Program-made: the position numbers and the translations under genes
Shown: positions 15,419 to 64,000 of the stretch, one piece after another
How positions within the stretch are numbered: position 1 is the stretch's first letter
Layout of the letters: every line of letters begins with the position of its first letter
NCBI RefSeq assembly: GCF_006345805.1
Contig: NC_043019.1
Span: 1,984,001-2,048,000, forward strand
DNA from: Octopus sinensis
Lineage: Eukaryota
Length of the DNA: 64,000 nt
Direction: 5' to 3'
Notes under the pieces: model-generated
Told to the model about the DNA's origin: nothing
The model's input: only the letters and a program-made list of their open reading frames with translations
The model's database searches: none

Positions 15419-15826
15419 TAGGCGCAGGAGTGGCTATGTGGTAAGTAGCTTGTTTACCAACCACATGGTTTCGGGTTCAGTCCCATTGTGTGGCATCTTG
15501 GGCAAGTTTCATCTACTATAGCCTCGGGCCGACCAAAGCCTTGTGAGTGGATTTGGTAGACGGAAACTGAAAGAAGCCCGTCGTATATATGTATATATAT
15601 ATGTGTGTGTATGTGTTTGTGTGTCTGTGTTTGTCCCCCTGACATTGCTTGACAACCGATGCTGGTGTGTTTATGTCCCCGTTACTTAGCGGTTCGGCAA
15701 AAGAGACCGATAGAATAAGTACTGGGCTTACAAAAGAATAAGTCCTGGGGTCGAGTTGCTCGATTAAAGGCGGTGCTCCATGGCCGCAGTCAAATGACTG
15801 AAACAAGTAAAAGAGAAAAAAAAGAG
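15419..15826 (+). mobile_element. SINE family B, full length with internal (TA)/(TG) microsatellite
   Basis: Head TAGGCGCAGGAGTGG, B-box-like GGGTTCAGTCCC, CORE-like segment, tail GAAACAAGTAAAAGAG. Confidence 0.9.
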
Positions 15827-22622: not shown

Positions 22623-22895
22623 CAGAGTACATTTAAACACATAAGGAATTCACGCGTGGGATTCAACACGCTAGAAAGAACAGCTAGGTTTTGTAACCAC
22701 AATATTAGAGATAAAATCTGACAGGAACGAAATGAAAAGATAGAAACTTTTTACCATCTAGTTGGTAAAGAGTTTTATTTTTTCATTTCGTTCCTGTCAG
22801 ATTTTATCTCTACTTTTGTGGTTATAAAACCTAGCAGTTCTTTCTGGCGTGTTGAATCCCACGAGTGAATTCCTTATTTGTTTAAATGTACACTG
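22623..22895. mobile_element. 273-bp fully palindromic MITE with TA target duplication
   Basis: ~134-bp inverted arms, loop TCTAGT at 22757-22762, ends TA-CAG(A/T)GTAC...GTACACTG-TA. Confidence 0.88.
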
Positions 22896-23145
22896 TAATA
22901 TACATATATATATATTGCTAAACCTCGCTAAGATAAATATTTCAATTACCTGAAGATTGACTGTAACCATAACTCGAATTATTACGAATTGGACAGCCAT
23001 GAAACAATCGTAGTGTTTTACTCATTATCTTTTTTTAAACTTTTTATACTTTTGATATATATTTAAAATAATATAAATTAATTAATTTTATGTATTGGCT
23101 TATGTTGTTTCATTGTTTGATTTGCTTAATAGTGGTTTTATCTCT

Positions 23146-23238
23146 AATTTAATATAATATATATATATATATATATATAATATATATATAATATATATAT
23201 AATATATATATTATATATATATATATAATATATATAAC

Positions 23239-23459: not shown

Positions 23460-23846
23460 TGGGGTGGTGTCTTCCACTGTAGCTTCGGCAGAAGACTTGT
23501 GAGTTGATCTGATAGATAGAAACTGAATGAAGCCTGTTGTATATATTTATGTAAATATGTATGGGTGAGTGTCTGTGTATATGGGTGTTTGTGTGCGTTT
23601 GTGTGTGTTTGTGTGTGTGTTTGTGTCTGTGTCTGTGTCTTTGTGTCTGTGTTTTCCCTAGTGTCCCTTGGTGATTGGTGTGTTTACGTCCCCTTACTTA
23701 ACGGTTCGGCAAGAGAGGTCGATAGAATAAGAACCTGGCTTAAAACAAGAATTAATAGGTTCAATTCATTCGATTAAAAATTGCTAGGGGAGGTACCCCA
23801 GCATAGTTGTAGTCTAATGACTGAAACAAATAAAAGATAAAAGATA
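23460..23846 (+). mobile_element. SINE family B, diverged, 5' degenerate
   Basis: TTTACGTCCCCTTACTTAACGGTTCGGCAAG..GATAGAATAAG..GACTGAAACAAATAAAAG tail. Confidence 0.65.
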
Positions 23847-24399: not shown

Positions 24400-24595
24400 T
24401 TTTAGTCGAACAACTCGACCCTAGGATTTATTTTGAAGCCTAGTACTTACTCTATGGATCTTTTTTGCCGAACCGCTAAGTTACGGAACGTAGACACACC
24501 AACACCGGTTGTCAAGCAGGGATGAGAGGACGAACACAGACACACATAGATATATACATACTTATATCTACATATATATTTATATATATATATAC

Positions 24596-24637
<42 letters not shown>

Positions 24638-24763
24638 TTATTTATACGACGAGTTACTTTCATTTTTCATCTAACAAATTCACTCACAAGGCTTTGGTCT
24701 GCCCGAGGTTTTATTAGGAGACGCTTGCCCAAGGTGGCATGCAGGGGAACTGAACCCAGCAAC
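24400..24763 (-). mobile_element. SINE family B, diverged
   Basis: Reverse-complement head, CORE-like and tail motifs around an internal microsatellite. Confidence 0.75.
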
Positions 24764-27029: not shown

Positions 27030-27563
27030 TCTTTTACTTTTTACTTGTTTTAGTCTTTAGACTGCGGCCATCCTGGGGCACCGACCTGAAGGATTTTTTA
27101 GTGGAATGAATCGACCCAAATACTGATTATTTTTTAAAAGCCTGGAACTTATTCTATCATTCTTTCTTTGCCGAACCGCTAGTTAACTTGAAGTGAAACA
27201 AACCATCACTGGTTATGTAGTGGTATAGTGGGAGGTGCAAACACAGACAAAAAGACACATACATTGATATAGATAGTGTGTATATGTATATATATATATA
27301 TGTGTGTGTTGTGTGTGTGTGTGTGTGTGTCTATGTATGTATTTATATATATATATATATATACACACGTGTGTGTGTGTGTGTGTGTGTACATATATGA
27401 TGGAACTCCTTCAGCCTCCGTCCATAACATCCACTCACAATATTTTGATCGACCCGAGGCTATAGTAGAAGACATTTGTTCAAGGTGTCACTCAGTGGAA
27501 CTGAACTCGGAACCATGTCTCTGGGATGCAAAGTACTTACACACAGTTACGCCTGCGCCTATA
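27030..27563 (-). mobile_element. SINE family B, diverged
   Basis: Tail, internal microsatellite and head motifs in reverse complement; the head end runs into the minisatellite. Confidence 0.75.
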
Positions 27564-28068
27564 GCTACGAATGCCACTATAACCACGCCTGCGCCTATAG
27601 CTACGAATGCCACTATAACCACGCCTGCGCCTATAGCTACGAATGCCCCTATAACCACGCCTGCGCCTATAGCTACGAATGCCCCTATAACCACGCCTGC
27701 GCCTATAGCTACGAATGCCCCTATAACCACGCCTGCGCCTATAGCTACGAATGCCACTATAACCACGCCTGCGCCTATAGCTACGAATGCCACTATAACC
27801 ACGCCTGCGCCTATAGCTACGAATGCCCCTAAACCACCACCGCCTGCGCCTATAGCTACGAATGCCACTATAACCACGGCTGCGCCTATAGCTACGATGC
27901 CACTATAACCACGCCGCCTGCGCCTATAGCTACGAATGCCCCTATAACCACGCCTGCGCCTATAGCTACGAATGCCCCTATAACCACGCCTGCGCCTATA
28001 GCTACGAATGCCCCTATAACCACGCCTGCGCCTATAGCTACGAATGCCCCTATAACCACGCCTGCGCC
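27549..28068. repeat. 36-bp minisatellite, ~14.5 copies
   Basis: Unit ACGCCTGCGCCTATAGCTACGAATGCC(A/C)CTATAACC. Confidence 0.95.
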
Positions 28069-28266
28069 AATACCTACGCCAACGCCTATGCCCTCGTTTA
28101 GGCTTATTTTTTTAATCTTAAATTTAAAGACATTTAAACATATTTGAATATATATACAAGTTCTTAGTTGAAATGTCTATCAATGAATTCACTGATTTAT
28201 TGTGGGAAGGTCGGGGTCGGGGTGCAGTTAATATGATAATTTACTTAAAGTTATGAAATATAATAT

Positions 28267-31914: not shown

Positions 31915-32068
31915 AGTGGCTGGATGCTAAGAAGCTTGCTTCCCAACCGCATGGTTCCGGGTTCAGTCCCACTGCGTGGCACTTTGGGCAAGTGTTCTCT
32001 GCTATAGCATCGAAACGACCAAAGCCTAGAGAGTGGATTTCGTAGACGGAAATTGAAAGAATCCCGTC

Positions 32069-32149
<81 letters not shown>

Positions 32150-32365
32150 TTTATCTGTGTGTCCCCCCACACACACACACACACCATCGCTTGACGTATT
32201 TACGTTGGCGTATTTACGTTTCCGTAACACCAGCGCTTCGGCAAAAGAGACCAATAGTATAAGTGATATGCTTACAAAGAATAAGTCCTGGGGTCGATTT
32301 GTTCGACTAAAGGCGGTGCTCAGAGCATGGCCGCAATCAAATGACTGAAACAAATAAAAGAATAA
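31915..32365 (+). mobile_element. SINE family B
   Basis: Head, CORE-like segment, internal microsatellite and tail all present. Confidence 0.85.
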
Positions 32366-32622
32366 ATCTAACTATGACAATTATATGAGTGGTGGATTAG
32401 CACAATCATTAGAGCACCAAATAAAATGCTTTGTGGAATGCGTTCCAGTTCCATTAAAACCAACATTGCCTTCCAAACTTCCGTGTTCAACAGAACAAAG
32501 CAGCCGTAATTTTCCGAGGGTTGAATTAATTGCCTAAACCTTTTTACTTCGACATTTTGTCCCTGTGCATTATTTAGAATCCACCACTTTTAATATTGTG
32601 TATATTGCATTGGGTTGGATGC

Positions 32623-33079: not shown

Positions 33080-33368
33080 CTGGCAAGGACAGAGATAGTG
33101 GGGAGGAGGGAGAGAGGGATGGAGTGAGGGAGGGAGATGGAAAGATATATGAGATAAACCGAGACAGAAACAGAGAGAATGTCTGGGATATACTGACAGA
33201 GAGAGAGAAGAGAAGAGGAGAAAGAAGGAAGAAGAAAGAAGAAAGAAAGAAAGAAAGAAAGAAAAGAAAGAAAGAAGAGAGAAAGAGAGAAAGGAAAAAA
33301 GGAAAAAAGAAAGAAAGAAAGAAAGAGACAGAGAAAGAGAGAAAGGAAGAAAGGAAGAGAGAAAGAAA

Positions 33369-33414
<46 letters not shown>

Positions 33415-33441
33415 CAGAGAAAGAGAGAAAGGAAGAAAGGA

Positions 33442-33479
<38 letters not shown>

Positions 33480-33496
33480 CAGAGAAAGAGAGAAAA

Positions 33497-33527
<31 letters not shown>

Positions 33528-33612
33528 AAGAAAGAAAAGAAGATAGGAAGAAAGGAAGAAAGAAAGAAAGAAAGGAAGAAAGAAAGAAAGAAAGATAGAA
33601 AGGAAGAGAGAA

Positions 33613-33655
<43 letters not shown>
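33080..33655. repeat. Purine-rich (GAAA)n/(GA)n tract
   Basis: Seen directly in sequence. Confidence 0.95.
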
Positions 33656-34345: not shown

Positions 34346-34931
34346 TAGGGTGGCGAGCTGACAGGAACGTTAGCACGCCGCGCGAAATGCGTAGCCGTAT
34401 TTCGTCTGCCGTTACGTTCTGAGTTCAAATTCCGCCGAGGTCGACTTTGCCTCATCGATAAATTAAATACCAGTTACGCACTGGGGTCGATGTAATCGAC
34501 TTAATACCTATGTTTGTCCTTGTTTGTCCCCTGTGTTTAGCCCCTTGTGGGTAATAAAGAAATAGGTATTTCGTCTGCCGCTACCTTCTGAGTTCAAATT
34601 CCGCCGAGGTCGACTTTGCCTTTCATCCTTTCGGGGTCGATTAAATAAGTACCAGTTGCGCCCTGGGGTCGATGTAATCGACTTAATACCTATGTCTGTC
34701 CTTGTTTGTCCCCTCTGTGTTTAGCCCCTTGTGGGTAATAAAGAAATAGGTATTTCGTCTGCCGCTAGGTTCTGAGTTCAAATTCCGCCGAGGTCGACTT
34801 TGCCTTTCATCCTTTCGGGGTATTAAATAAGTACCAGTTACGCACTGGGGTCGATGTAATCGACTTAATCTGTTTGTCTGTCCTTGTTTGTCCCCTCTGT
34901 GTTTAGCCCCTTGTGGGTAGTAAATAAATAG
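34346..34931 (+). mobile_element. SINE family A trimer (one headed unit plus two headless ~184-bp units)
   Basis: Junctions AAATAGGTATTTCGTCTGCC at ~34565 and ~34749; 15-bp TSD GTATGTAAAACTATT at 34331-34345 and 34932-34946. Confidence 0.9.
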
Positions 34932-35868
34932 GTATGTAAAACTATTCTGATAGTAACTGATGCGCATAACATGTGCGTCTATCGCTACAGTGTCAGAGCT
35001 AATACAATTGATACTTTTAAACAAGCTGGATCTCCGAGTTTCCACGAATGTAATTTTATACCTCTGTTCCATCTGGCTCATCTATCATAAAACCCAGACA
35101 GCGTCTAACTCTGTCGTCCAACTCCATTGAAAGTTATAGACAAAAACAGATACAAAGAAATATATCGATCTTGATTGATTGCTAAGGTTTATAGGAAATA
35201 GTCTCACTTTGTCCACCTGGTTTGTGGTTCTTGTTGAAATTCCCAATTCAGATATCAATTAAATATTATCAATAATTATCCATTCACCGCATTTAAACAT
35301 CATGCAATGGGGGATATGTCTATATTTCGGAATTATGGATAGTATAAGCAATACACTGTATCAGGTGAAATTATATTCTGAACTGGCTACAACTTCAATA
35401 ATAAACGTATTGATTTTGTGCGGTATCAATGAAGAAATCAACTTTTGCCATTAAGAAATAGCTAAATAAGAAAGGAATAAAAGAAATCAAAAGTAAAAAG
35501 GCGATGTATGGTGTATCTTTATAAAGTTTAGATTAGTATTTCTCTTTCTGTAGTCATATATAATCACAGGTTTTACCAGCAACTTTTCTATCACTCCTAT
35601 AGATTCATTTCTGCCGTCTGTTCTGTTTAATATTTCAAATGAATAGCCACTCTTCGGGGACTTTGTAATTTGCTATTAAATAGGTTATTCGTTTGTAATT
35701 TTAGGGGGTTCTGAATGATTTTGTTTATGTATATTGCTTATTGTGTTCTCCCCTCAGGTTATCAATCAGGTGTCCACACTAGCTTTTGTAGCATGTAATG
35801 GATAAGGTTCTGTTACTTTCATTTGTTTTGTGAACATAGCTTTGTATGTGCGGACAGTTACATGTTAA

Positions 35869-38743: not shown

Positions 38744-39140
38744 GTTAGCGCGCCGGGTGAAATGCTAAGCGGTATTTCGTCTGCCGCTACGTTTTGAGTT
38801 CAAATTCCGCCGAGGCCGACTTTGCCTTTCATCCTTTCGAGGTCGATTAAATAAGTACCAGTTACGTACTGGGGTCGATATAATGGACTTAATCCGTTTG
38901 TCTGTCCTTGTTTGTCCTCTCTGTGTTTAGCCCCTTGTGGGTAGTAAAGAAATAGGTATTTCGTCTGCCGTTACGTTCTGAGTTCAAATTCCGCCGAGGT
39001 CGACTTTGCTTTTCATCCTTTCGGGGTCGATAAATAAAGTACCAGTTTCCCACTGGGGTCGATGTAATCGACTTAATCCGTTTGTCTGTCCTTGTTTGTC
39101 CCTTCTATGTTTAGCCCCTTGTGGGTAGTAAAGAAATAAA
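38744..39140 (+). mobile_element. SINE family A dimer
   Basis: Same AAATAGGTATTTCG junction at ~38955. Confidence 0.88.
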
Positions 39141-42316: not shown

Positions 42317-43963
42317 GTTTCTTTATTAGCCACACAGGGCTGCACACAGATAGAACAAATTACAAGGTAGAGCTTTTCTTTTGAAGGTTTTAAAGAAAAA
42401 AAAAAATAATAATAATAATAATAAAAAAAAATAAAATAAAATAAAAAAAAAGGGGGGTCGATCAAAAGGGATCGTAAAAGGAGAGAAAGAGGACAAAAAA
42501 AAGGGGGGTTAAAAAAAAGGGAGAGGAAAAAAAATTGATCAATAGGGATCGTTATCACAGAAATGTCAATATGAAGTGTAAAGGGGAGGACAGGTGAGGT
42601 TTACCCGTGGAAAGAAAAGCCTACGGAAAAGACCACGGTAACCTCGGTCAATGAAGTCACATGTTATATTTCTTTTTTTTTTTTTTGCAAATAAGCAACT
42701 CTCTGTATTAATTTTTACGGTTCATAGAATCATAGTCAAGGTGGCTTCGTCATTCATACGTGCTATCCTTGCTACATTCACCCATCTTTTTTAAAACATT
42801 CACTAGACAAAACTTGCCTCTCTACTCTCACTTTTTTCTTCAAGTGATACTTGAAGAAGTTGATGAGAGATTGACCATAGAGGAAAGTGTTTGTCACTAA
42901 TCCTTTCAGACGCGTCCACCAGATACATTCTTTCGCCATAGCCACAAGTATGATAAAAATAGCTCTTCCTTCCCGTTTGAAGGAAGGAGGCGTGACGATA
43001 TTAACGATAGACTCGGCTGATAAACCGACACGTCCCACACGTGACAGCAGTCGTTCGACATAAGCCCACAGGTGGTAAATTGCTGGACACTGCACGATTG
43101 CGTGCAGAGCGGTTTCGTCGCTCTGCCCGCATCTCGGGCAGGTCGGCCCCGTGTTTCTCGAGCCATGCCTATAGAGCTTATCCCAAACGGGTAGCGCTTC
43201 TCGGTAGCACCGCCAGGCCAGGGATCTCTGGAAGTTGTCCATAGGTCCCGGGCCGAAAATCGTTTGAAACAGGCGGGTCAGGTATTCCTCGTCGACGCCC
43301 AGGTTTGCCCCGAGCTCGTCGTCGTACCTCCCCTCCACTAATCCCCTATAGAATGCTTTGGTTGTGTTGAAGTCACTCAAGGTCGACCCGGGACGGCAGA
43401 GTTGCTTGAGAGCAACGCGACACTCGCGGTGCCATTCGCCCTTCTTCGGCTCTTTTTGATCCACGACTGTAGTTCGGTCATGGAGACGAGTTGCGGGAAT
43501 GCGTGCCTCACAAACGGCGACCACACCTGTTCACCGTCGTCTACATAGAGCCGGAGATGTCGCAGTCTCAGCGCGTGTCTGCGCATCATCAACCACGGCA
43601 TGCCCAGCCCTCCTTTTAACGGGTGTTGACAGCAAATGGATCGCCTGACCATCGGGACGCATCCTTTCCACAAGAAGCGGAAGAGGATGCGTTCTAGTTT
43701 GGTGATGGTAGGGTCGGGACAAGGTACGACGGTCAGGCGGTAGTAGATGATGGACGCGATGTACGCGTTCACCACCTCCGCCCGACCTTTTAGGGACAGT
43801 TTCCTCTCGGCCCATTGCTGGGCGAGAGTGACCACCCTACTCGTTATCTCGTTCCAGTTCTTCTCCATTTGGAGGTCCGGACCGAACCAGACCCCGAGCA
43901 ACTCAACGGGGCCGTCTGTCCAGCGTCCCACGACGGAGGTACTGGTGGACGGCATGGGCTTGC
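42317..43963 (-). mobile_element. 5'-truncated copy of the Tx1-like LINE (ORF2 C-terminus plus 3'UTR)
   Basis: Highly similar to 3010-~4660; zinc finger CPRCGQSDETALHAIVQC; truncation point abuts (GATA)n at 43964-43987. Confidence 0.93.
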
Positions 43964-44347
43964 GATAGATAGATAGATAGATAGATATACTCGCAGTCAT
44001 GAAATGAGTGTAGAATATTTTTTAAAGACAGAACCGATGCATGACTCTTGTTGATACATATGTCAGTATGTCACATGCCTGTAAGCAACTGTGCACGTAT
44101 GTTCATTCCACGAACAATGGATATACACATACGTTTGTAAGTTATTTTATACAAATATTTAGTTTATATAGCACAGACCACCTGTGCTTCTAGTTGCATA
44201 TGAAAATGTAAAGACTGAAGCTTTAAGTTCCGCACCAATTTGACATAATCCTCTTTCTATATGATTTCAGACTAGCCATTCGTATCTCCTGATTTCCATA
44301 ACAGTGCCTGACTTTTGGTGTCAGTGTCATAGAATAAATGTTTCAAA

Positions 44348-44506
44348 CAGGTGTGGCTGTCTGGTAAGAAGCATGTTTCCCAACAGCATGGTTCCGGGTT
44401 CAGTTTTACTGCGTGGCACCTTGGGTGTCTTCGACTTTTCTACTTCAACCTTGGTCGACCAAAGCCTTATGAGTGGATCTGGTAGACGGAACCTGAAAGA
44501 AACCCG

Positions 44507-44509
<3 letters not shown>
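44348..44509 (+). mobile_element. SINE family B 5' half whose internal (TA)n hosts the foldback element
   Basis: Head and CORE-like motifs up to GAAAGAAACCCGTCAT, then (TA)n. Confidence 0.75.
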
Positions 44510-44552
<43 letters not shown>

Positions 44553-44723
44553 ATATTAGGGAATAAATCCAAATTTACAGGGAAAAAAATCAGATTTGGG
44601 ATTAAATCCAATTTTATAGTAAAATATTATAAAATATTATTAGAGACAAAACCACTATTTTGCAAAACAAACAAGGAAAGACTTAATCAATACATAAAAT
44701 TTTAATAAATAGTCAAAAAACCG

Positions 44724-44766
44724 CCACTACAATCGTTTCTTGTTTTGATCGACAATCTTCAGGTGG
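44724..44766 (-). ncRNA. Minimal type I hammerhead ribozyme (left arm; one stem II mismatch)
   Basis: Minus strand: CCAC-CTGAAGA-TTGTC GATCAA AACAA-GAAA-C GATT G-TA-GTGG. Confidence 0.72.
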
Positions 44767-47700
44767 ACTTCCAATCTAAAAAATCAATATTTTAAAATAT
44801 AAAAATAATAATTTTAAAATAATTAAAGTATGAATGAAAAAATATAAGTATATAATCCTATATAACCTATATATAATCCATATATAATCAAAATATAAAA
44901 ACAATATAAACTAAAAAAATATCAACAATTAAATATAAACTATAAAATATAAAATATAAAATATAAAACAAAACAAAAAAATAATAATAATATAATAATA
45001 AACTATATATACACCCATACACATATACCTAATTATATATAACCATATCTAACTACATACACTAAATCACACACCTATATATATATCCCTATACATACAC
45101 ATAAAAACGTCTAGGCAACTATAATAAATAAAATAGCTAAATACTTCAACACAATACTTATTCATACTCCCACACACACACACATACAACCCACATTCAC
45201 GCTCTAGAAAACGGACATCACTCAAAACTATGAACGGAGAAATGGAATAAATGGAATTAAAAATTATATTCACTTGGTAAAACGAAACACTACTTAAAAA
45301 TTATGAATGAAACAATGCAATAAAACAACAGACATCGCAAATAGACACAAATTACTACGAATTCCTTAACAAACCTATCATGATAAACCAAAAACTCATA
45401 AAAACATATAATGATAAAATCTCCCTTTACTAAACTCTATAACAAACCTATAGCAATCCCCCTAACCTAAACATTCACACACAAATACACACACGTAAAC
45501 CACACACCCACGACATATACAAATACCCACACCACTTACACATACCAATACATACATATAAACCTCAACATATACTCCAAAAACCCACTCAACCCCACAC
45601 AGACAAATAAACACAAAAATTATGAATGGATTCATTTATAAAACTACCATGATAAGCTAAAACTCACAAAACAGAAATGATAAAACCTCCCTTTACTAAA
45701 CACTATAACATACTTATATAGCAATCCCTTTAACCTATACATTCACACACAAAAACACACACGTAAACCACACACCATAACAAATACAAACACCCACCCC
45801 ACTCACACACACCCACAAGTACATATAAGCCTCAACATATACACCAAACAAAATTACTTTACCAATGAACTTAACATATGTATAAAAAGTATAACCGCTC
45901 TGGAAACGAACATCTCTAAATTAATGAATGGAGAAATGGAATAAATGGAATTAAAAATAATATTCACGTGGCAAAACGAACACCACTCAAAAATTATGAA
46001 TGAAACAATGTAATAAAACAACCAACATCGAAAATAGACAAATTACCACGAATTCCCTAAAAAAAACATGATAAACCAAAACTCTTAAAAACATATAACG
46101 ATAAAATCTCCCTTTGCTAAACTCTATAACAAACCTATATAATAATCCCCCTAACCTAAACATTCACACACAAATACACACACGTAAACCACAGACCCAC
46201 GACTTATACACATACCTATACTAACTTATAAACCTCAATATACACCAAAACCCACTCACTCCCCACACAAGTGTATCTCCGGTGTATATGTTGAGGTTTA
46301 TATGTAGCGCTGTGGAGGCGAATGTCGTTGAAATTGTGAATGAATGGGTGGAGTTGGGAATTGTAACCGGGTGGTGGACTAGCGTTGCTTGGAATTGTGA
46401 ATGGATTAGTGTCGTAGTGAGGTAGGCATCGAGAATAGGTTTGGGTTACTGCAAGTTGTTTGTTAGAGCTGCTAAGGTGAGCTAAAGCTCATAAATGTAT
46501 ATAATGATTTTTCATGGTAGTTTTTTAAAGAATCCATTCATAATAAATTTTTTAAGTAGTGTTGGTTTGCTACGTGGATATAGTTTTTAGTTCCATTTAT
46601 TCTATTTCTCCATTCATAATTTAAATGACGTTACTTTCTATGGCGCGTATTCTTCTTTTTTTTACATAAGTTATTTCTATGGTAACGTAATTTGGTTTGT
46701 TTTTTTTAACGGCTAAGAATTTAATTTCACTTCATAATTTGAAACTGACTTGTAAGTATGTATTTTATTTATCCTTATATCATATTGTTATTTTTGATAT
46801 TCTGGTTAATTACGATGTATTTAATGTTGTTTTCATAGGAGTGTTTATGTATATGAGATTGTGTGTGAGTTTTTAGTTGTATAATTTATTTATCTGTATG
46901 AGTGTGGGTGTGTAAATATTGTTGTATATATCGAGTTTAGTGAGTATGTATATGCGTATATGTGAGGGAGTATATGTATCTGTTGTGTGTGTGTGTTTTG
47001 CGTGGGTGTGTTTGTGTGTGTGTGTGAATGTTTGTATTTATTTGGGTTTGTTATTTTGTTTTAGGGATGTTTGTGTTTTGTGTTGTGTTGTGTGTGTTGG
47101 GTGGGGTGTGGTTTTGGTGTATATGAGGTTTTAAGTTAGTATAGGTATGTGTATAAGTCGTGGGTCTGTGGTTTACGTGTGTGTATTTGTGTGTGAATGT
47201 TTAGGTTAGGGGGATTGCTATATAGGTTTGTTATAGAGTTTAGCAAAGGGAGATTTTATCGTTATATGTTTTTATGAGTTTTTTTATGAGTTTTGGTTTA
47301 TCATGGTTTTTTTAGGGAATTCGTGGTAATTTGTCTATTTTCGATGTTGGTTGTTTTATTACATTGTTTCATTCATAATTTTTGAGTGGTGTTCGTTTTG
47401 CTACGTGAATAACCGGGTGGTGGACTAGCGTTGCTTGGAATTGTGAATGGAATAGTGTAGTAGTGAGGTAGGCATAGAGAATGGGTTTGGGTTACTGCAA
47501 GTTGTTTGTTAGAGCTGCTAAGGTGAGCTAAAGCTCATAAATGTATATAATGATTTTTCATGGTAGTTTTTTAAAGAATCCATTCATAATAAAATTTTTT
47601 AAGTAGTGTTGGTTTGCCACGTGGATATAGTTTTTAGTTCCATTTATTCTATTTCTCCATTCATAATTTAAATGACGTTTACTTTCCATGGCGCGTATTC

Positions 47701-49621
47701 TTTTTTTACATAAGTTATTTCTATGGTAACGTAATTTTGGTTTGATTTTTTTAACGGCTAAGAATTTAATTTCACTTCATAATTTGAAACTGACTTGTAA
47801 GTATGTCTTTTATTTATCCTTATGTCATATTGTTTTTTTGATATTCTGGTTAATTACGATGTATTTAATGTTGTTTTCATAGGAGTGTTTTGTATATGAG
47901 TTTGTGTGTGAGTTTTTAGTTGTGTATAATTTATTTATCTGTATGAGTGTGGGTGTGTAAATATTGTTGTATATATCGAGTTTAGTGAGTATGTATATGC
48001 GTATATGTGAGGGAGTATATGTATCCGTTGTGTGTGTGTGTTTTGCGTGTGTGTGTGTTTGTGTGTGAATGTGTATATGGGTTTGTTATTTAGGTTTTGG
48101 GCATGTGTGTTATTTGTCTGTGTGGGGGAGTGGGGTTTTTTTTTTTTGTGTATTGAGGTTTATAAGTTAGTATAGGTATGTGTATAAGTCGTGGGTCTGT
48201 GGTTTACGTGTGTGTATTTGTGTGTGAATGTTTAGGTTAGGGGGATTATTATATAGGTTTGTTATAGAGTTTAGCAAAGGGAGATTTTATCGTTATATGT
48301 TTTTTAAGAGTTTTGGTTTATCATGGTTTTTTTAGGGAATTCGTGGTAATTTGTCTATTTTCGATGTTGGTTGTTTTATTACATTGTTTCATTCATAATT
48401 TTTGAGTGGTGTTCGTTTTGCCACGTGAATATTATTTTTAATTCCATTTATTCCATTTCTCCATTCATTAATTTAGAGATGTTCGTTTCCAGAGCGGTTA
48501 TACTTTTTATACATATGTTAAGTTCATTGGTAAAGTAATTTTTTGGTGGTGTATATGTTGAGGCTTATATGAACTTGTGGGTGTGTGTGAGTGGGGTGGG
48601 TGTTTGTATTTGTTATGGGTGTGTGGTTTACGTGTGTGTTTGTGTGTGAATGTATAGGTTAAAGGGATTGCTATAAGTATGTTATAGTGTTTAGTAAAGG
48701 GAGGTTTTATCATTTCTGTTTTGTGAGTTTTAGCTTATCATGGTAGTTTTATAAAAGAATCCATTCATATTTTTTGTGTTTATCTGTCTGTGTGGGGTTG
48801 AGTGGGTTTTTGGAGTATAGTTGTTTGATGGTGTATGTATGTTGGTATGTGTAAGTGGTGTGGGTATTTGTATATGTCGTGGGTGTGTGGTTTACGTGTG
48901 TGTATTGTTGTGTGTGAATGTTTAGGTTAGGGGGATTGCTATATAGGTTTGTTATAGAGTTTAGTAAAGGGAGATTTTATCATTATATGTTTTTATGAGT
49001 TTTTGGTTTATCATGATAGGTTGTTAAGGAATTCGTAGTAATTTGTGTCTATTTGCGATGTCTGTTGTTTTATTGCATTGTTTCATTCATAATTTTTAAG
49101 TAGTGTTCGTTTTACCAAGTGAATATTTTTGAATTCCATTTATTCCATTCTCCGTTCATAGTTTTGAGTGATGTCCGTTTTCTAGAGCGTGAATGTGGGT
49201 TGTATGTGTGTGTGGGAGTATGAATAAGTATTGTGTTGAAGTATTTAGCTATTTTATTTATTTATAGTTGCCTAGACGTTTTTATGTGTATGTATAGGGA
49301 TATATATATAGGGTGTGATTTAGTGTATGTAGTTAGATATGGTTATATATAATTAGGTATATGTGTATGGGTGTATATAGTTTATTATTATATTATTATT
49401 ATTTTTTTGTTTTGTTTTATATTTTATATTTTATATTTTATAGTTTATATTTAATTGTTGATAGGTTTTTTTAGTTTATATATTGTTTTTATATTTTGAT
49501 TATATATGGATTATATATAGGTTATATATGCATTATATACTTATATTTTTTCATTCATACTTTAATTATTTTAAAATTATTATTTTTATATTTTAAAATA
49601 TTGATTTTTTAGATTGGAAGT

Positions 49622-49664
49622 CCACCTGAAGATTGTCGATCAAGACAAGAAACGATTGTAGTGG
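49622..49664 (+). ncRNA. Minimal type I hammerhead ribozyme (right arm; intact)
   Basis: Stem I CCAC/GTGG; core CTGAAGA 49626-49632; stem II TTGTC/GACAA; GAAA 49649-49652; stem III AC/GT around GATT; GTA triplet with predicted cleavage after 49660. Confidence 0.8.
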
Positions 49665-49757
49665 CGGTTTTTTTTACTATTTATTAAAATTTTATGTATT
49701 GATTAAGTCTTTCCTTGTTTGTTTTGCAAAATAGTGGTTTTGTCTCTAATAATATTT

Positions 49758-49807
<50 letters not shown>

Positions 49808-49849
49808 TGTGTGTGTGAATGTGTGTGTGTGCGTGTACTTCCCTTTTTT

Positions 49850-49970
49850 TAATTCTGGTACTTATTCTATCGTTGATTGTTTGAGGAGCCGCCAAATTAC
49901 GGTGACGTAACCAAACCAACACCGGTTGGGAAGCGGTGCGGACGGAGAACAGACACAGACACGAAGACAT
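49850..49970 (-). mobile_element. Diverged SINE family B 3' fragment
   Basis: GTACTTATTCTATCG...AAATTACGGTGACGTAA reverse-complement tail motifs. Confidence 0.55.
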
Positions 49971-50001
49971 ATACATAACAATAATAAATATTGATAGAAA
50001 C

Positions 50002-50124
<123 letters not shown>

Positions 50125-51678: not shown

Positions 51679-52044
51679 TATACGTATATGCAGAACATTT
51701 TGGTATACGTGTAGCGGACTTTTAAATAACCGTTATTTTTGATACGCTAAAAATACGTTCAGCAAAGGCAGGAAGGAGAATCAGAGAAAATATAAATACG
51801 CAGTCACGTCACAAACCATGCCACGTTTCGTATTGTTTTTTCTCTCTCTTTCTCCATCTCCAGATCAATTTCTCTCTCTCTCTCTCTCTCAACTTTCTGC
51901 TCTTCCTCTTGCATGTATACTTTCACTCCCACTCTTACTCACTTTCTCACACACTTATTTTTTTATTTACATCCACTGACTTACGTTTTCTTTCGATACA
52001 TACTTGTGTGTATTTTTCTCTATGTGTGCGTGTGTGAGTGTTCT

Positions 52045-52459
52045 ATGTCTTTACTACCCACAAAGAGCTAAACACAGAGAGGACAAACAAGGACAGACAT
52101 AGGTATTAAGTCAATTACATCGACCCCAGTGCGTAGCTGGTACTTATTTAATCGACCCCGAAAGGATGAAAGGCAAAGTCGACCTCGGCGGAATTTGAAC
52201 TCAGAACGTAGCGGCAGACGAAATAGCTATTTCTTTACTACTCACAAGGGGCTACACACAGAGAGGACAAACAAGGACAGACAAACGGATTAAGTTGATT
52301 ATATCGACCCCAGTGCGCAACTGGTACTTAATTAATCGACCCTGAAAGGATGAAAGACAAAGTCGACCTCGGCGGAATTTGAACTCAGAACCTAACGGCA
52401 GACGAAATACTGCTAAGCATTTCGCCCGGCGTGCTAACCTTTCTGCCAGCTCGCCGCCT
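52045..52459 (-). mobile_element. SINE family A dimer
   Basis: Junction at ~52220-52230; flanked by the near-identical TGCGTGTGTG(A/C)GTGTTC. Confidence 0.88.
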
Positions 52460-60915: not shown

Positions 60916-61780
60916 TGACTAACTTGCAGGCCTGCAACAGACGAAATTGGTCTGATAACGAAATGATGTTTTAATAAACCATGGTTCTCTTTTCCCAAAC
61001 AGAAAATCTAAATGTTTTGTGTTTGAATGAGATTGCCGAAAAAAATCACAAGTGGTCAACACACGATCCGTCAAACAGATTCATCGCAAACTGAAACATA
61101 TCGAAGTATCTTTCAAACTGACAAAAGGCCATTATGAAAAGCTTCTTCATATTTTCACAGTTCAAGAACAGCAACAGCTAGAAAATCAGCAGCCACAACA
61201 ACAACAACAGAATGAGCCACTCCTGGTTCCCAGCACAATGGCTGACCCTAACATCGGTCAAGCACAACAACAACAACAACAGCCACAGCAACAAGAACAA
61301 CAACAGCCACTCCTCAACTCTAGCTTACTAGATGATTCACTAAATGCCAGTATCTTTTCACCGCTCTCACGGCAACCACCACAATTATCATCATCATCAT
61401 CACCACCGCTGCCACCATCGTCTTCTATCACCAAAAATACCAACAGAAAACCAAATAAGAAAAACCACTGCCCTCTTCCCCCACATCACCACCTCAATAC
61501 TACTGCAGTAACAAAAACTTAAAGAAACATAGGAAGCAGAATGCGCCCCCCACGGCACAAACAAGAAATCCCCAAATTTGCCGCTATTCACTGCGCCAGA
61601 GACTCTGCACAAATAGTGACTGCATCTTCACGCATCTACCCGGCACTAGACGCACTACCGGCCAAGGCCAAAGCACGCATCCCACAATAACATCAACACC
61701 ACCAATAGTAAATCGAAATTCAAAACACACACAACTCGGAGTCCCAAAATCTGCCGGTATTCCCAACGTGAGATAACATG
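60916..61780 (+). pseudogene. LINE ORF1 remnant with Gln/Pro-rich linker and CCCH zinc finger
   Basis: CRYSLRQRLCTNSDCIFTH (C-x8-C-x4-C-x3-H) at 61579-61635; stops and frameshifts upstream. Confidence 0.55.
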
Positions 61781-62189
61781 TCTGCTGAGTGACTGTCCCT
61801 TCACTCATCTTCCAGGGACCCGACGCACAAACAGAAACGGGGCTTCAAGCCAACACACAAACCTGAATAAAAATAAAAATAGAAACACACCATGCTGCAG
61901 TAATGCTGGTCCAGTCTTTTCAGGAAGACACAAAACAAAACAACAACAAAAGTGGAAACTACAACCCTATCCAACAGTGCAACCACACCTCCAGCCAAAA
62001 ACTGCTCCCTAAGCAGGAAAATCTTTTTTAGCCATGTTGAACATGGCAAAAGAGATACAAAAACATTCTAACCATCACTCAACACCATCCTATGCTATTA
62101 CCCCAGTGCACCAATTCCCCACATTGCTGCCACTAACACACACAAAAAATCCAAGCCCCCTGCAACAGTCAAAACCAGCCACTACACTA

Positions 62190-62808
62190 ACCTCCACATT
62201 CCTACTCAATGCACAAGGTGTCAGCCCTTCCATCAATGCACAAAAATGGAAGGTCCAATTCATTGAAGACTGGGTTGGTAACCATTCACACCACATCCCT
62301 TTCTTCATTCTCACTGAGACCCACCTTGACAACTCCCACTTGGAAGCCGAAGTGAGAGTGAAGAATTTCACAACCATCCGCGCGCATCGTATCGGCAGGA
62401 GGAAGGGTGGAACTGCCATTTTCCTGCATGATTCATTTACGGCAGATGGAAATAGTATATTCTCCAACGGCTACTGTGAATCAGTCACCGTGCACAACAA
62501 AGCCAATGACCTGACAGTAATTGGGCTCTATAACATGAAATTCCACCAGCCGAAAGCTAATCCTAGTGACCTTCCTCCAGCCCACCCATTTGACAACATG
62601 GATCTCCATAATGCCAACTGGGATGCAATCAGGAACGAGCTATCGCATGTTGACTGGTCCTTTACACATACACACATCTCCACCAACCATAAGACATCTT
62701 GGCAGATCTTTGTAGACACCGTCACAGACATATGTGCAAAACACTCCCCACCAAGACCTGTGAACAAAAAGTGCAGAATCCCCAAAACAGAAAAACCATT
62801 ATCAGAAA
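62190..62808 (+). pseudogene. ORF2 APE endonuclease N-terminus with an internal deletion
   Basis: FLLNAQG..FFILTETHL..RRKGGTAIFL..VIGLY jumps to NMKF at ~62531; no GDFN or SDH motif is present. Confidence 0.75.
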
Positions 62809-64000
62809 ATAAAAAGAACAAACAAAAAAATTAACAAACTAAAGTACTGCCAACAGCAACACACACATTCGACGGCTATCGCACTGCTTGAATCCAAAAA
62901 ATATAACCTCCAACAATGCATGAAGACCCTCATCAATAACCAAAGATCAGCTGAGGAGAAGTGGGCCATTGAAAAAATCAAACTCAACCCCAAAGTGTTC
63001 TTTTCATTTGCGAGGAAACGCAGGGTCACTGTCTCCACTGTAGGCCCTCTAATTGACGAAACTGGCACTCTCCAAGATAATGCCAAATCCATGGCCGAGA
63101 TACTGCAGAAACAATACTGCTCTGTTTTCAGCAATCCTGATATGGCCGATCTGGGCTGTATCAGTGATGTCAACCCCCAACACACTATATCGGACATAAC
63201 GTTTAGTGCCCCTGATGTCTTAGCGGCGATAAACGAAATAAAACACAATTCAGCAGTAGGCCCCGATAGGTTCCCTGCTTGTGTCCTGAAGGTGTGTCGA
63301 CACCAACTTGCATCTCCCCTTGCTAATCTGTGGAGAAACTCACTGGATGCTGGCTATTTTCCAAAAAACCTTCTGTCCCAGTCTGTTGTCCCAGTTTTCA
63401 AAAAGGGAAACAAGTCCCTTGCAGTGAATTACCGTCCGATCTCACTCACCTCTCATATCATCAAGGTATTTGAGAGGGTGGTGAGATCTCGAATAACCCA
63501 ATTTCTGGAAGGCAACAGACGGCTGATCTCCAACCAACATGGGTTCCGTAATGGAAGAGACTGCCTAACGCAGCTCCTGCATCACTTTGAGGACATTTTG
63601 AGAGCTTTGGGAGAGGGCTCCAACACCGATGTCATCTACCTTGATTTCAGTAAGGCCTTCGACAGGGTCGATCACAAGATCCTATTGAAAAAACTATCCA
63701 ACATTGGTGTCTCTGGAAAGTTATTGAAATGGATCAAGTGTTTCCTGACAGACAGATCTCAACATGTTGTAGTTGAAGGGGTAAAATCAAGCCCAGCCAA
63801 AGTCAGTAGTGGCGTTCCGCAAGGCACTGTGCTGGGCCCACTTCTTTTCATCATTTACATTAATGACATTAATGACATTAATGACATCATCAAGCACAGC
63901 AACATAAAAATCTTTGCAGATGACTCCAAGCTACAGAAGGTCATAAATGAGGCGAGTGACCGGACATGCCTTCAGTCAGATCTACTGGCTGTTATCCAAT
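62809..64000 (+). CDS. ORF2 reverse transcriptase (open frame to the window end; partial)
   Basis: AVGPD, NYRPISLTS, QHGFR, YLDFSKAFDRVDH, SGVPQGTVLGPLLF, IFADD motifs; no stop seen in this frame. Confidence 0.9.
   Translation, partial: MKRTNKKINKLKYCQQQHTHSTAIALLESKKYNLQQCMKTLINNQRSAEEKWAIEKIKLNPKVFFSFARKRRVTVSTVGPLIDETGTLQDNAKSMAEILQKQYCSVFSNPDMADLGCISDVNPQHTISDITFSAPDVLAAINEIKHNSAVGPDRFPACVLKVCRHQLASPLANLWRNSLDAGYFPKNLLSQSVVPVFKKGNKSLAVNYRPISLTSHIIKVFERVVRSRITQFLEGNRRLISNQHGFRNGRDCLTQLLHHFEDILRALGEGSNTDVIYLDFSKAFDRVDHKILLKKLSNIGVSGKLLKWIKCFLTDRSQHVVVEGVKSSPAKVSSGVPQGTVLGPLLFIIYINDINDINDIIKHSNIKIFADDSKLQKVINEASDRTCLQSDLLAVIQ

What the first reader, a model, noticed from the sequence alone, without database searches (positions are those of the whole stretch)
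44549..49760. 5.2-kb foldback element with a hammerhead ribozyme on each strand
Seen: two ~1.64-kb inverted arms with a sharp switch from CA-rich to GT-rich sequence at ~46270, (TA)n at both ends, and no long ORF. Each arm carries, ~100-180 bp from its outer end, a complete minimal type I hammerhead reading outward (49622-49664 plus; 44724-44766 minus). The stem III segment ACGAUUGU pairs with a second copy of itself at all 8 positions (two G-U pairs). Established: Penelope-like elements carry minimal hammerheads whose palindromic stem III supports dimeric folding, and they often insert as inverted, partly duplicated structures. Inference: this is a large non-autonomous PLE/retrozyme-like element. 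Transcription in either direction would give one sense ribozyme plus a kilobase-scale hairpin that could mask it, so it may be a self-cleaving dsRNA source and a candidate ADAR or small-RNA substrate in a heavily RNA-editing lineage.
Basis: partly seen in the sequence, partly recalled or inferred. Interest (0 to 1): 0.85.

Follow-up and report, generated by a model that had tools for sequence, protein, structure and literature searches.

The report
Inverted ribozyme-bearing retroelement insertion in octopod DNA
This is most likely an ordinary, non-coding mobile-DNA insertion of the Penelope-like type: two copies sit head to head in a (TA)n repeat, each with a small hammerhead ribozyme motif near its outer end, which is a known pattern in animals and has no demonstrated function here.

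Summary
Arms 44629-46250 and 49760-48141 are 96.8% complementary, strand composition flips at about 46270, (TA)n flanks both ends, and there is no ORF longer than 71 aa. The structure is not a symmetric foldback. A longer sense copy (about 46281-49760, with an internal 1.04-kb tandem duplication) abuts a 5'-truncated inverted copy (44629-46269) across about 11 nt of filler.

A strict type I hammerhead descriptor hits only 49622-49664 (+) and 44724-44766 (-). It hit about 1 in 1000 shuffled windows. Two copies co-fold into the classical double hammerhead.

A third, about 84%-identical, 233-bp copy of the same 3' module lies at 22916-23148, also in (TA)n. It keeps both catalytic boxes around a replaced but still pairing helix II.

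Several features match published Penelope-like element (PLE) insertion signatures: 3' ends facing out, 5' truncation, a 79-nt tail at one end only, and (TA)n targets.

Against this: there is no RT/GIY-YIG ORF, no Rfam hammerhead hit at any threshold tried, U-A instead of G10.1-C11.1, and only one diverged relative. The flanks are not colinear and there are no A-to-G footprints. The dsRNA/ADAR idea is untested.

Verdict: a new member of a known kind, of modest interest.

The parts
44509..44549 (.). Left target microsatellite (TA)20, which is the internal microsatellite of a SINE whose head lies at 44354-44508
   Evidence: TRF; SINE alignment; sequence
44550..44628 (-). One-sided 79-nt 3' extension ('tail') of the left copy. 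It starts with a repeat of the terminal 10-mer TAATATTTTA and holds two 17-nt direct sub-repeats. It is absent at the right end and in the solo copy
   Evidence: Sequence; unique in the window; the PLE tail concept is described
44629..46269 (-). Left arm: an inverted, 5'-truncated copy of the element. Its sense strand is the minus strand, with the 3' end at 44629
   Evidence: 96.8% to 49760-48141; inner end 98.6% to 48141-48431 against 94.8% to 47093-47411
44724..44766 (-). Hammerhead motif, left copy. All core positions are intact, helix II is weakened (C-G to C.A), and predicted cleavage is after A44728
46270..46280 (.). Hinge: about 11 nt of filler between the 5' ends of the two copies. Only a 20-bp hairpin (46227-46246 with 46281-46301) spans it
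   Evidence: Sequence; weak miRNA-like hairpin hit; arm limits
46281..49760 (+). Right, longer sense copy (about 3.5 kb). It is G+T-rich (A 22%, C 7%, G 24%, T 47%), non-coding, and built of degenerate sub-repeats
46364..48431 (+). Internal tandem duplication of a ~1.04-kb unit (46364-47411 and 47410-48431; 93% by BLAST, 95% of aligned ungapped positions). It carries no ribozyme
49622..49664 (+). Hammerhead motif, right copy: stem I CCAC/GUGG, core CUGAAGA, helix II UUGUC-GAUCAA-GACAA, GAAA, helix III C-GAUU-G, U16.1, A17. Predicted cleavage lies between 49660 and 49661
49665..49760 (+). 3'-terminal block of the element (…AATAGTGGTTTTGTCTCTAATAATATTTTA). It is shared at 84% with the solo copy
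49760..49836 (.). Right target microsatellite (TA)n(TG)n, in the same order as in intact copies of the SINE
22916..23148 (+). Solo 233-bp diverged copy of the 3' module, flanked by (TA)n on both sides. Its hammerhead-like motif lies at 22946-23016 (cores CUGAAGA and GAAA kept, helix II interior replaced, U.U at 10.1/11.1, helix III CAAUCG). It has no terminal inverted repeat

Best explanation
This is a genomic insertion of a non-coding, non-autonomous retroelement that is copied by the enzyme of a Penelope-like element (PLE).

The family's 3' module consists of a small type I hammerhead, with a short helix III that allows dimers, followed by a ~100-nt terminal block. The proposed sequence of events is as follows. 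A PLE RT/GIY-YIG enzyme cut both strands inside a (TA)n tract that lies within a SINE. Each DNA end primed reverse transcription of an element RNA. The two incomplete cDNAs were joined 5' end to 5' end at 46270-46280. The result is a longer sense copy (46281-49760) and an inverted 5'-truncated copy (44629-46269), both with 3' ends facing out. One copy started from a more distal site on the RNA, which left the 79-nt tail.

The hammerhead is inherited from the family, where it would act in tandem or dimeric transcripts. At this locus each strand has only one sense ribozyme, and it would be buried in a 1.6-kb duplex, so it is probably inert here.

Shown: the anatomy, the rarity of the motif, and the dimer fold. 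Inferred: mobilisation by a PLE, priming on both strands, and ribozyme activity.
For: Arms and asymmetric centre.

Both outer ends stop at the same element terminus, which is also the end of an independent 233-bp copy at 22916-23148. That copy shares only this end, has no terminal inverted repeat, and also sits in (TA)n. One-ended homology of this kind is the mark of 5'-truncated retro-copies.

The tail is present at one end only.

The literature lists the same features for PLEs: frequent 5' truncation, partial tandems, an inverted 5'-truncated copy adjacent at the 5' end, a tail at one end, (TA)n targets, and hammerheads near the 3' end (PMC8557442). A purified PLE protein cleaves and extends both strands, and two RT start sites explain the tail (PMC11167929).

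Hammerhead: all invariant core positions and three helices are present, and the descriptor hit about 1 in 1000 shuffled windows. RNAcofold of two copies gives the double hammerhead as its minimum-energy structure, -21.4 against 2 x -6.5 kcal/mol. The diverged copy keeps both boxes while the interior of helix II is replaced by different sequence that still pairs in register (6 of 8 pairs, p about 0.02-0.05). A 2-bp helix III with a tetraloop, and U.U at the base of helix II, both have natural precedents (PMC7229834).

Host context: the window is octopod. A LINE ORF's only organism-named hit is Argonauta hians, and the SINE head recurs in an A. hians locus. Octopus vulgaris has 31 recently active PLE families (PMC13282606).
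Against: There is no RT or GIY-YIG ORF in the element or anywhere in the window, so the PLE link rests on architecture alone.

No Rfam hammerhead model matches, even at E<=10 on a 111-nt slice.

Three of the traits reported for metazoan PLE mini-hammerheads are absent: G10.1-C11.1 (it is U-A here), the unpaired nucleotide after A9, and a 6-8 bp helix II (PMC4209133).

Only one diverged relative exists. Conservation of its core is not significant on its own (about 0.84^13, roughly 0.1), and its helix III no longer self-pairs.

The tandem duplication does not include the ribozyme module, so there is no pLTR-like same-strand pair of ribozymes.

The tail is 79 nt, against 30-40 nt in the literature.

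The flanks are not colinear. The SINE head on the left is followed on the right by the microsatellite and then an inverted SINE fragment. No target-site duplication or empty site can be reconstructed.
Confidence: 0.6

Rival explanations
1. The hammerhead match is fortuitous or long dead. The structure would then be an inverted duplication of a satellite-like G+T-rich repeat, or a retroposon of another class such as a LINE-dependent SINE or SVA-like composite. The 3' module would be just its recognition end.
For: No Rfam hit. U-A at 10.1/11.1 and no loop-loop contacts are evident. The monomer hammerhead fold is not the minimum-energy structure, and the folding z-score is about 0.4. At roughly 0.001 chance hits per 64 kb, a genome of 2-3 Gb would give tens of chance hits (the genome size is my assumption). 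The interior is a VNTR-like array with no ribozyme. LINE fragments are abundant in the window.
Against: The motif sits at the same place in an independently inserted, 84%-identical copy, with both boxes intact and a replaced but still pairing helix II. The dimer fold is the cofold minimum-energy structure. Head-to-head copies with both 3' ends outward plus a one-sided tail are PLE traits rather than LINE traits. My recollection is that L1 twin priming leaves only one 3' end at the target.
Confidence: 0.2
2. Assembly artefact: a chimeric foldback long read, or a false join of two family copies from different loci at the hinge.
For: The arms are nearly identical, with about 1% substitutions outside one 20-nt patch, and most differences are 1-4 nt indels in homopolymer or dinucleotide runs, as long-read errors would be. 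The left and right flanks are not colinear parts of the same SINE. PLE tandem and inverted structures are known to trouble assemblies.
Against: The turnaround is not symmetric. The left arm is complementary to 48141-49760, not to the sequence next to it, and 1.9 kb of non-palindromic, tandemly duplicated sequence lies between. Only a 20-bp hairpin spans the hinge, which is too short for an overlap join. The tail is present on one side only.
Confidence: 0.07
3. The locus works. It would be a transcribed source of a kilobase-long hairpin RNA with a self-cleaving end, feeding ADAR editing or small-RNA pathways.
For: If the locus were transcribed through, 1.6 kb of >=97% complementary sequence would pair, including the ribozyme region (142 nt at 99%). 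Coleoid cephalopods edit RNA heavily (general knowledge).
Against: There are no expression data. There is no A-to-G excess between arms or between sub-repeats, so there is no sign that edited RNAs were ever copied back. The duplex would mask the only sense ribozyme. Any inverted repeat would do the same, so nothing here is specific to this element.
Confidence: 0.08
4. A DNA transposon of the foldback or long-TIR type (a Tc1/mariner-like or FB-like non-autonomous element) that inserted at a TA dinucleotide.
For: Long inverted termini built of sub-repeats, and TA-rich target sites. Foldback elements with such arms are known (my recollection).
Against: The ends are asymmetric, with a 79-nt tail on one side only. 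The centre is asymmetric. The solo copy shares only one end and has no inverted terminus. The termini carry no transposase-type end motif that I recognise, and there is no discrete TA duplication separable from (TA)n.
Confidence: 0.05

Closest known systems
Penelope-like elements (PLEs) with hammerhead motifs in their pseudo-LTRs (Cervera and de la Pena 2014, PMC4209133; Craig et al. 2021, PMC8557442)
   Same: A type I hammerhead with a short helix I and a short helix III that allows dimers, placed near the 3' end. Copies are 5'-truncated. An inverted 5'-truncated copy abuts the 5' end. There is a one-sided tail. Insertion is into (TA)n. Pairs of mini-hammerheads on opposite strands were already noted in Schistosoma.
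   Different: There is no RT/GIY-YIG ORF. Helix II is 5 bp with U-A at its base, instead of 6-8 bp with G10.1-C11.1 and a bulged nucleotide. The tail is 79 nt rather than 30-40 nt. The body is a 3.5-kb G+T-rich array of sub-repeats. The tandem duplication does not include the ribozyme module.
Animal non-LTR retrozymes (Cervera and de la Pena 2020, PMC7229834; Li et al. 2026 preprint, 10.64898/2026.07.22.740005)
   Same: Non-coding, low G+C, and carrying a type I hammerhead with a 2-bp helix III plus tetraloop, as in invertebrate retrozymes. Retrozymes are proposed to be PLE-derived and PLE-mobilised. The 233-bp solo copy is in the retrozyme monomer size range.
   Different: The defining short tandem array (about 170-400 bp units, one ribozyme each), which yields circular RNAs, is absent. 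Here there is one ribozyme per 1.6-3.5 kb copy and no same-strand pair.
Dimeric (double) hammerheads of newt and salamander satellite transcripts (Forster et al. 1988 as cited in PMC4209133; PMC7229834)
   Same: Helix III is too weak for the monomer. Two copies form an extended intermolecular helix III, and the predicted cofold minimum-energy structure is that double hammerhead.
   Different: In salamanders the two ribozymes come from adjacent units of one transcript. Here the two copies are on opposite strands, so dimerisation would need two transcripts.
SVA-like composite non-autonomous retroposons with an internal VNTR (my recollection)
   Same: A non-coding element with a variable tandem-repeat body and a 3' module recognised by another element's enzyme.
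   Different: The presumed partner class differs (PLE rather than L1). This element has a ribozyme module, a microsatellite target, and no poly(A).

Membership tests
Hammerhead ribozyme, type I | Invariant core: C3 U4 G5 A6 N7 G8 A9, G12 A13 A14, A15.1-U16.1, and H17 at the cleavage site | tested here: met
   CUGAAGA ... GAAA ... U-A at 49626-49660. The same is present in the left arm and in the solo copy.
Hammerhead ribozyme, type I | Three helices around the core, with helix I open and helices II and III closed by loops | tested here: met
   Helix I is 4 bp, helix II is 5 bp (4 bp in the left copy), and helix III is 2 bp plus a tetraloop. In the solo copy helix II has 6 of 8 pairs, with U.U at its base.
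Hammerhead ribozyme, type I | Score at or above the Rfam gathering threshold for a hammerhead covariance model | tested here: not met
   No hammerhead hit at gathering threshold. None at E<=10 on 5.8 kb, on a 111-nt slice, or on the solo copy. The PLE mini-hammerhead papers I read detected them with RNAmotif descriptors, so this result is not decisive.
Hammerhead ribozyme, type I | Covariation or compensatory change in the helices across relatives | tested here: inconclusive
   Only one diverged relative exists. The interior of helix II is replaced yet still pairs (p about 0.02-0.05). Helix I loses one pair, and helix III self-pairing is lost. No further copies were found in any collection searched.
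Hammerhead ribozyme, type I | Site-specific self-cleavage | not testable with these tools
   This needs in vitro transcription of monomer and dimer constructs with core mutants.
Metazoan PLE mini-hammerhead (Cervera and de la Pena 2014) | [quoted passage not shown] | tested here: met
   CCAC/GUGG, 4 bp, with no clear extension.
Metazoan PLE mini-hammerhead (Cervera and de la Pena 2014) | Conserved G10.1-C11.1 pair and an unpaired nucleotide between A9 and 10.1 | tested here: not met
   10.1/11.1 is U-A in both arms and U.U in the solo copy. There is no bulge. The traits are listed.
Metazoan PLE mini-hammerhead (Cervera and de la Pena 2014) | Long helix II (6-8 bp) | tested here: not met
   5 bp in the right arm and 4 bp in the left arm. 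The solo copy has 8 positions with two mismatches.
Metazoan PLE mini-hammerhead (Cervera and de la Pena 2014) | Palindromic 15.2-16.2 and loop 3, allowing a dimeric helix III | tested here: met
   ACGAUUGU self-pairs at 8 of 8 positions with two G-U pairs (-5.8 kcal/mol), and the double hammerhead is the cofold minimum-energy structure. This is not kept in the solo copy (ACAAUCGU, +0.3 kcal/mol).
Penelope-like element (PLE) | A single ORF encoding a telomerase-like RT with a GIY-YIG endonuclease | tested here: not met
   No ORF over 71 aa in the element. Among the ten window ORFs scanned, Pfam matched only an RVT_1 fragment (E 0.0027, below its cut-off) and zf-RVT, in ORFs I read as LINE remnants. 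The element can therefore only be a non-autonomous dependant, not a PLE proper.
Penelope-like element (PLE) | Insertion architecture: 5' truncation, an inverted 5'-truncated copy at the 5' end, and 3' ends at the target | tested here: met
   The definition is given.
Penelope-like element (PLE) | Partial tandem (pseudo-LTR) carrying the hammerhead | tested here: not met
   The tandem duplication 46364-48431 lacks the ribozyme module.
Penelope-like element (PLE) | [quoted passage not shown] | tested here: met
   79 nt at 44550-44628, on the left only. This is longer than the 30-40 bp in the literature.
Penelope-like element (PLE) | Microsatellite, especially (TA)n, target preference (Neptune and Naiad clades) | tested here: met
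   Both insertion events in the window lie in (TA)n.
Penelope-like element (PLE) | A 3' end shared with an autonomous RT/GIY-YIG partner in the same genome | not testable with these tools
   The source genome is not available. The public collections searched hold almost no octopod DNA.
Animal non-LTR retrozyme | Short tandem repeats (about 170-400 bp), each with a type I hammerhead, expressed as circular RNAs | tested here: not met
   There is one ribozyme per copy, and none in the internal repeats. Circular RNA cannot be tested here.
Foldback or long-TIR DNA transposon | Two equivalent inverted termini with a discrete target-site duplication, and family copies that carry both ends | tested here: not met
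   There is a one-sided tail and an asymmetric centre. The solo copy has only one end and no inverted terminus.

The most novel reading that the evidence does not exclude
Octopods may harbour an undescribed, abundant family of long non-coding, VNTR-bearing parasites of Penelope-like elements. Their hammerhead would differ from the published PLE consensus (U-A at 10.1/11.1, 5-bp helix II). Their habitual head-to-head insertions would create kilobase-scale, near-perfect hairpin loci that are transcribed and feed ADAR editing or small-RNA pathways.
Probability: 0.1. Interest if true: 0.55.

Novelty: new member of a known kind. Interest (0 to 1): 0.3.

Why it matters
If confirmed genome-wide, this would extend hammerhead-bearing, PLE-dependent non-autonomous elements to cephalopods. 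My literature searches found no description of hammerheads in cephalopods. It would also add a hammerhead variant that departs from the published PLE consensus.

The head-to-head, one-tailed structure is a natural genomic footprint of the both-strand priming recently shown in vitro for a PLE enzyme. Collections of such loci could help test that mechanism.

For genome annotation, the practical value is a seed for masking a repeat family that targets the (TA)n tracts inside an abundant SINE. The dsRNA/ADAR angle is interesting only if expression is shown.

Tried and rejected
(1) Rfam covariance models were run at gathering threshold on the whole window, and at E<=10 on 5.8 kb, on a 111-nt slice and on the solo copy. 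There was no hammerhead hit, only weak miRNA or snoRNA-like noise.

(2) Single-strand folding gave no excess stability. The monomer hammerhead is not the minimum-energy structure.

(3) Harvest of family relatives:
- A metagenome scan with the 21-nt 3' end gave 3 chance hits in coding DNA.
- A viral scan with the ribozyme pattern gave nothing.
- A bacterial and archaeal genome scan gave 2 chance hits without helices.
- nhmmer of the 3' module found only the three known copies in the window and none in the fetched loci.

(4) Independent assemblies of the locus were sought by exact look-up of three ORFs next to or overlapping the element. None is on record.

(5) An attempt to harvest octopod DNA through a LINE ORF and a SINE-derived ORF returned almost no octopod contigs.

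(6) ADAR or deaminase footprints: the substitution spectra between arms and between sub-repeats show no A/G or C/T excess. G/T differences dominate and reflect slippage in (TG)-like tracts.

(7) Empty-site or target-duplication reconstruction from intact SINE copies failed because the right flank is an inverted SINE fragment.

(8) The TIR/MITE reading of the solo copy was rejected, because there is no inverted terminus beyond the (TA)n flanks.

(9) A Helitron reading was considered and dropped. The ends lack the TC...CTRR termini (my recollection of the family), and Helitrons do not make inverted arms.

Full report
**1. What is in the sequence**

The inverted repeat is real. BLAST of the region against itself gives one inverted alignment, 44629-46250 against 49760-48141, at 96.8% identity over 1640 columns. 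It includes stretches of 242 nt at 100%.

A global alignment of the two arms shows 28 substitutions, 14 of them in one patch at 48820-48841. It also shows 19 indels of 1-4 nt, nearly all in T, TA or TG runs.

The strand composition flips at the hinge. GC skew is -0.60 at 46000-46299 and +0.52 at 46300-46599. The sense strand of the right copy is A 22%, C 7%, G 24%, T 47%.

(TA)n lies at 44509-44549 and again from 49760, where it runs into (TG)n. No ORF inside the element exceeds 71 aa, and those present are low-complexity.

**2. It is not a symmetric foldback**

The central 1.9 kb (46251-48140) is not palindromic. It contains a tandem duplication of a ~1.04-kb unit, 46364-47411 and 47410-48431 (93% by BLAST; 95% of aligned ungapped positions). 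The last ~320 nt of that unit are the same sequence as the inner end of the arms.

The left arm's inner end is 98.6% identical to the second unit's end (48141-48431) and 94.8% identical to the first unit's end.

The locus therefore reads as two copies:
- a longer sense copy on the plus strand (about 46281-49760, made of 94 nt, unit A1, unit A2 and a 1.33-kb 3' part);
- a 1.64-kb inverted copy lacking its 5' part (44629-46269).

About 11 nt (46270-46280) between them belong to neither copy. Only a 20-bp hairpin (46227-46246 with 46281-46301) spans the junction.

The body of the element is built of degenerate sub-repeats. For example, 45200-45527 resembles 45896-46216 at 88%.

**3. The hammerhead motif**

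The sequence at 49622-49664 reads CCAC CUGAAGA UUGUC-GAUCAA-GACAA GAAA C-GAUU-G U A GUGG. All invariant core positions are present, and H17 is A49660.
- Helix I is 4 bp.
- Helix II is 5 bp.
- Helix III is A-U plus C-G, closed by a tetraloop.

The left-arm copy (44724-44766, minus strand) has one change, G to A, that breaks the innermost helix II pair.

A strict descriptor written for this purpose finds only these two sites in the window, on both strands. It found 0 of 200 and then 1 of 800 dinucleotide-preserving shuffles of the window. A wider descriptor that allows a missing helix III and a bulge gave 2 of 300. The motif is thus about a one-in-a-thousand event per 64 kb. It would still occur tens of times by chance in a genome of 2-3 Gb (my assumption for the genome size).

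RNAcofold of two 43-nt copies gives, as its minimum-energy structure (-21.4 kcal/mol), the classical double hammerhead. That structure has an 8-bp intermolecular helix III and swapped helix I strands. A single copy has a minimum of -6.5 kcal/mol, against -5.4 for the hammerhead fold. However, given the two pairs the descriptor already requires, a self-complementary tetraloop is only about a 0.14 event (my estimate).

The evidence against is as follows.
- No Rfam hammerhead model matches at the gathering score, nor at E<=10 even on a 111-nt slice.
- The 10.1/11.1 pair is U-A.
- No loop-loop contacts are evident.
- The single-strand fold shows no excess stability.

The PLE mini-hammerhead papers I read detected these motifs with RNAmotif descriptors rather than covariance models. 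I therefore treat the Rfam negative as a caution, not a refutation.

**4. A third, independent copy**

BLAST and nhmmer of the element against the window find one more relative of the outer ~160 nt, at 22916-23148 on the plus strand.

It is a 233-bp insert with (TA)n on both sides. It shares only the 3' end with the arms: the terminal 65 columns are 84% identical and end in AATAGTGGTTTTRTCTCTAAT. It has no terminal inverted repeat.

It keeps CCUGAAGAUUG and GAAAC.AU.GUAGUG. The interior of helix II is replaced by 44 nt of unrelated sequence that still pairs in register (6 of 8 pairs, with a run of 4). Shuffle tests give p about 0.02-0.05.

It also has U.U at the base of helix II, one lost pair in helix I, and a helix III (ACAAUCGU) that no longer self-pairs. 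U.U at that position, and a 2-bp helix III with a tetraloop, both occur in natural animal hammerheads (PMC7229834).

This is suggestive evidence that the motif is a family feature. One relative is not enough for a covariation test.

**5. Ends and flanks**

The right copy and the solo copy end at ...CTCTAAT plus a few A/T bases, directly against (TA)n.

The left copy continues for 79 more nt (44550-44628) before (TA)n. This extension begins with a repeat of the terminal 10-mer and contains two 17-nt direct sub-repeats. It is unique in the window.

The left flank is the head of a SINE up to its internal (TA)n (44354-44556). Intact copies of this SINE in the window run head, (TA)n(TG)n, second half. 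On the right, the (TA)n(TG)n follows in the right order. After about 20 nt there is then an inverted fragment of the same SINE family (49858-50072, SINE positions 363 back to 154).

The flanks are therefore not colinear, and I could not reconstruct an empty site or a target-site duplication. Either a second rearrangement happened here, or two SINE copies were involved.

**6. Host**

The window is full of microsatellites, SINE copies and LINE fragments. A LINE ORF next to the element has as its only organism-named hit a protein of Argonauta hians, an octopod, at 56% identity. A 21-kb A. hians locus contains the SINE head at 85-91%. The SINE also matches my recollection of the abundant Octopus SINE. 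I take the source to be an octopod.

Octopus vulgaris is reported to have 31 recently active PLE families (PMC13282606), so enzyme donors plausibly exist.

**7. Most likely explanation**

Craig et al. (PMC8557442) list the following as typical of PLE insertions:
- frequent 5' truncation;
- partial tandems;
- an inverted 5'-truncated copy next to the 5' end;
- a 30-40 bp tail, often at only one end;
- (TA)n targets in some clades;
- hammerheads near the 3' end.

A purified PLE protein cleaves and extends both DNA strands. It starts reverse transcription at two adjacent internal sites, which accounts for the tail (PMC11167929).

The locus fits this pattern on every architectural point except two. 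The tandem part does not include the ribozyme module, and the tail is longer. It lacks any RT/GIY-YIG ORF.

I therefore read it as a non-autonomous element copied by a PLE enzyme. In this reading it was inserted in one event by priming from both ends of a break in (TA)n, and the two cDNAs were joined at the hinge.

If the arms were identical at insertion, their 0.9-1.7% divergence suggests roughly 1-2.5 million years. This uses the calibration implied in PMC13282606 (JC 0.09 at 25 My) and is a rough inference. The tandem units (95%) and the solo copy (84%) are older or belong to other subfamilies.

**8. What the ribozyme would do here**

In PLEs the hammerheads are thought to process tandem transcripts, but cleavage is weak in vitro and was not needed for insertion in vitro.

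At this locus each strand has one sense ribozyme. A read-through transcript would pair it with its antisense copy 4.9 kb away (142 nt at 99%). I therefore expect it to be inert in cis.

The dsRNA/ADAR proposal is possible for any transcribed inverted repeat. Nothing here supports it. Differences between arms and between sub-repeats show no A/G excess, and no expression data are available.

**9. Rivals**

A fortuitous motif in another kind of repeat (0.2) is weakened by the third copy and the dimer fold.

An assembly artefact (0.07) is weakened by the asymmetric centre, the one-sided tail and the lack of a symmetric turnaround. It cannot be excluded without reads, and the non-colinear flanks keep it alive.

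A foldback or TIR DNA transposon (0.05) is contradicted by the one-ended solo copy and the asymmetric ends.

**10. Comparison and novelty**

The element works like a PLE-dependent non-autonomous element. It is not a PLE proper because it has no ORF. It is not a retrozyme in the published animal sense because there is no short tandem array of ribozyme units.

Its hammerhead meets the general type I definition. It departs from the published metazoan PLE consensus at three points: no G10.1-C11.1, no bulged nucleotide, and a shorter helix II.

Opposite-strand pairs of PLE hammerheads a few hundred bp apart were already noted in Schistosoma. My literature searches found no paper describing hammerheads in cephalopods. 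This is a new member of a known kind, of modest interest.

**11. Limits**

All comparative inference rests on three copies in one window, two of which are near-identical. The public collections available here contain almost no octopod DNA.

Noticed in passing
window 49837-50124, with 44354-44556: The element's flanks are not colinear. A SINE head and its (TA)n lie on the left. On the right the (TA)n(TG)n is followed by about 20 nt and then an inverted fragment of the same SINE family (positions 363 back to 154), which runs into a (GATA)33 array. This suggests a second rearrangement or inversion at the locus.
   Followed up: partly
window 9391-9640 (-), 15431-15820 (+), 31917-32366 (+), 51212-75 (+), and fragments at 19476, 23492-23842, 24401-24757, 27032-27546: There are many copies of a ~460-bp SINE with an internal (TA)n(TG)n microsatellite. 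ARAGORN calls no tRNA in them. The internal (TA)n is the target of the ribozyme-bearing element at 44509. The SINE head recurs in an Argonauta hians locus (L009 1991-2045 and 3466-3562).
   Followed up: partly
window 42778-44000 (-) and 3664-5600 (-): Two G+C-rich (about 57%) fragments that I read as LINE remnants, with near-identical protein segments (…GRWTDGPVELLGVWFGPDLQMEKNWNEITSRVV…). Pfam gives zf-RVT and a weak RVT_1. One lies about 550 bp left of the element. Neither is PLE-type.
   Followed up: partly
window 61052-62834 (+): A Q-rich ORF is followed by a 266-aa ORF containing an …ILTETHLD… segment that I recall as typical of a LINE AP-endonuclease. Pfam gave no hit at E<=0.01.
   Followed up: no
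window 22710-22811: A perfect ~29-bp inverted repeat (GATAAAATCTGACAGGAACGAAATGAAAA … TTTTCATTTCGTTCCTGTCAGATTTTATC) separated by about 45 nt. It lies about 100 bp upstream of the solo ribozyme-module copy. It could be a small hairpin element or MITE.
   Followed up: no
window 27549-28078: A 36-bp minisatellite with 14.6 copies at 95% identity (ACGCCTGCGCCTATAGCTACGAATGCCCCTATAACC). It is open in several frames and adjoins a SINE fragment.
   Followed up: no
window 34455-34935, 38771-39138, 52043-52409: Three short arrays (2-2.6 copies) of a 182-184-bp unit. The unit carries tRNA-like and SINE-like motifs (…GAGTTCAAATTCCGCCGAGG…AATAAGTACCAG…) and appears to be a second SINE-like family that tends to occur as dimers.
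   Followed up: no
window 33198-33653: A 450-bp purine-rich (AGAA/AGAG)n tract.
   Followed up: no
window 46281-49760 (sense strand): There is an extreme strand asymmetry (C only 6-7%, T 47%) across a 3.5-kb non-coding element. Substitution spectra do not point to a deaminase or ADAR origin. It may simply reflect a (TG)n-derived repeat body, but it remains unexplained.
   Followed up: partly
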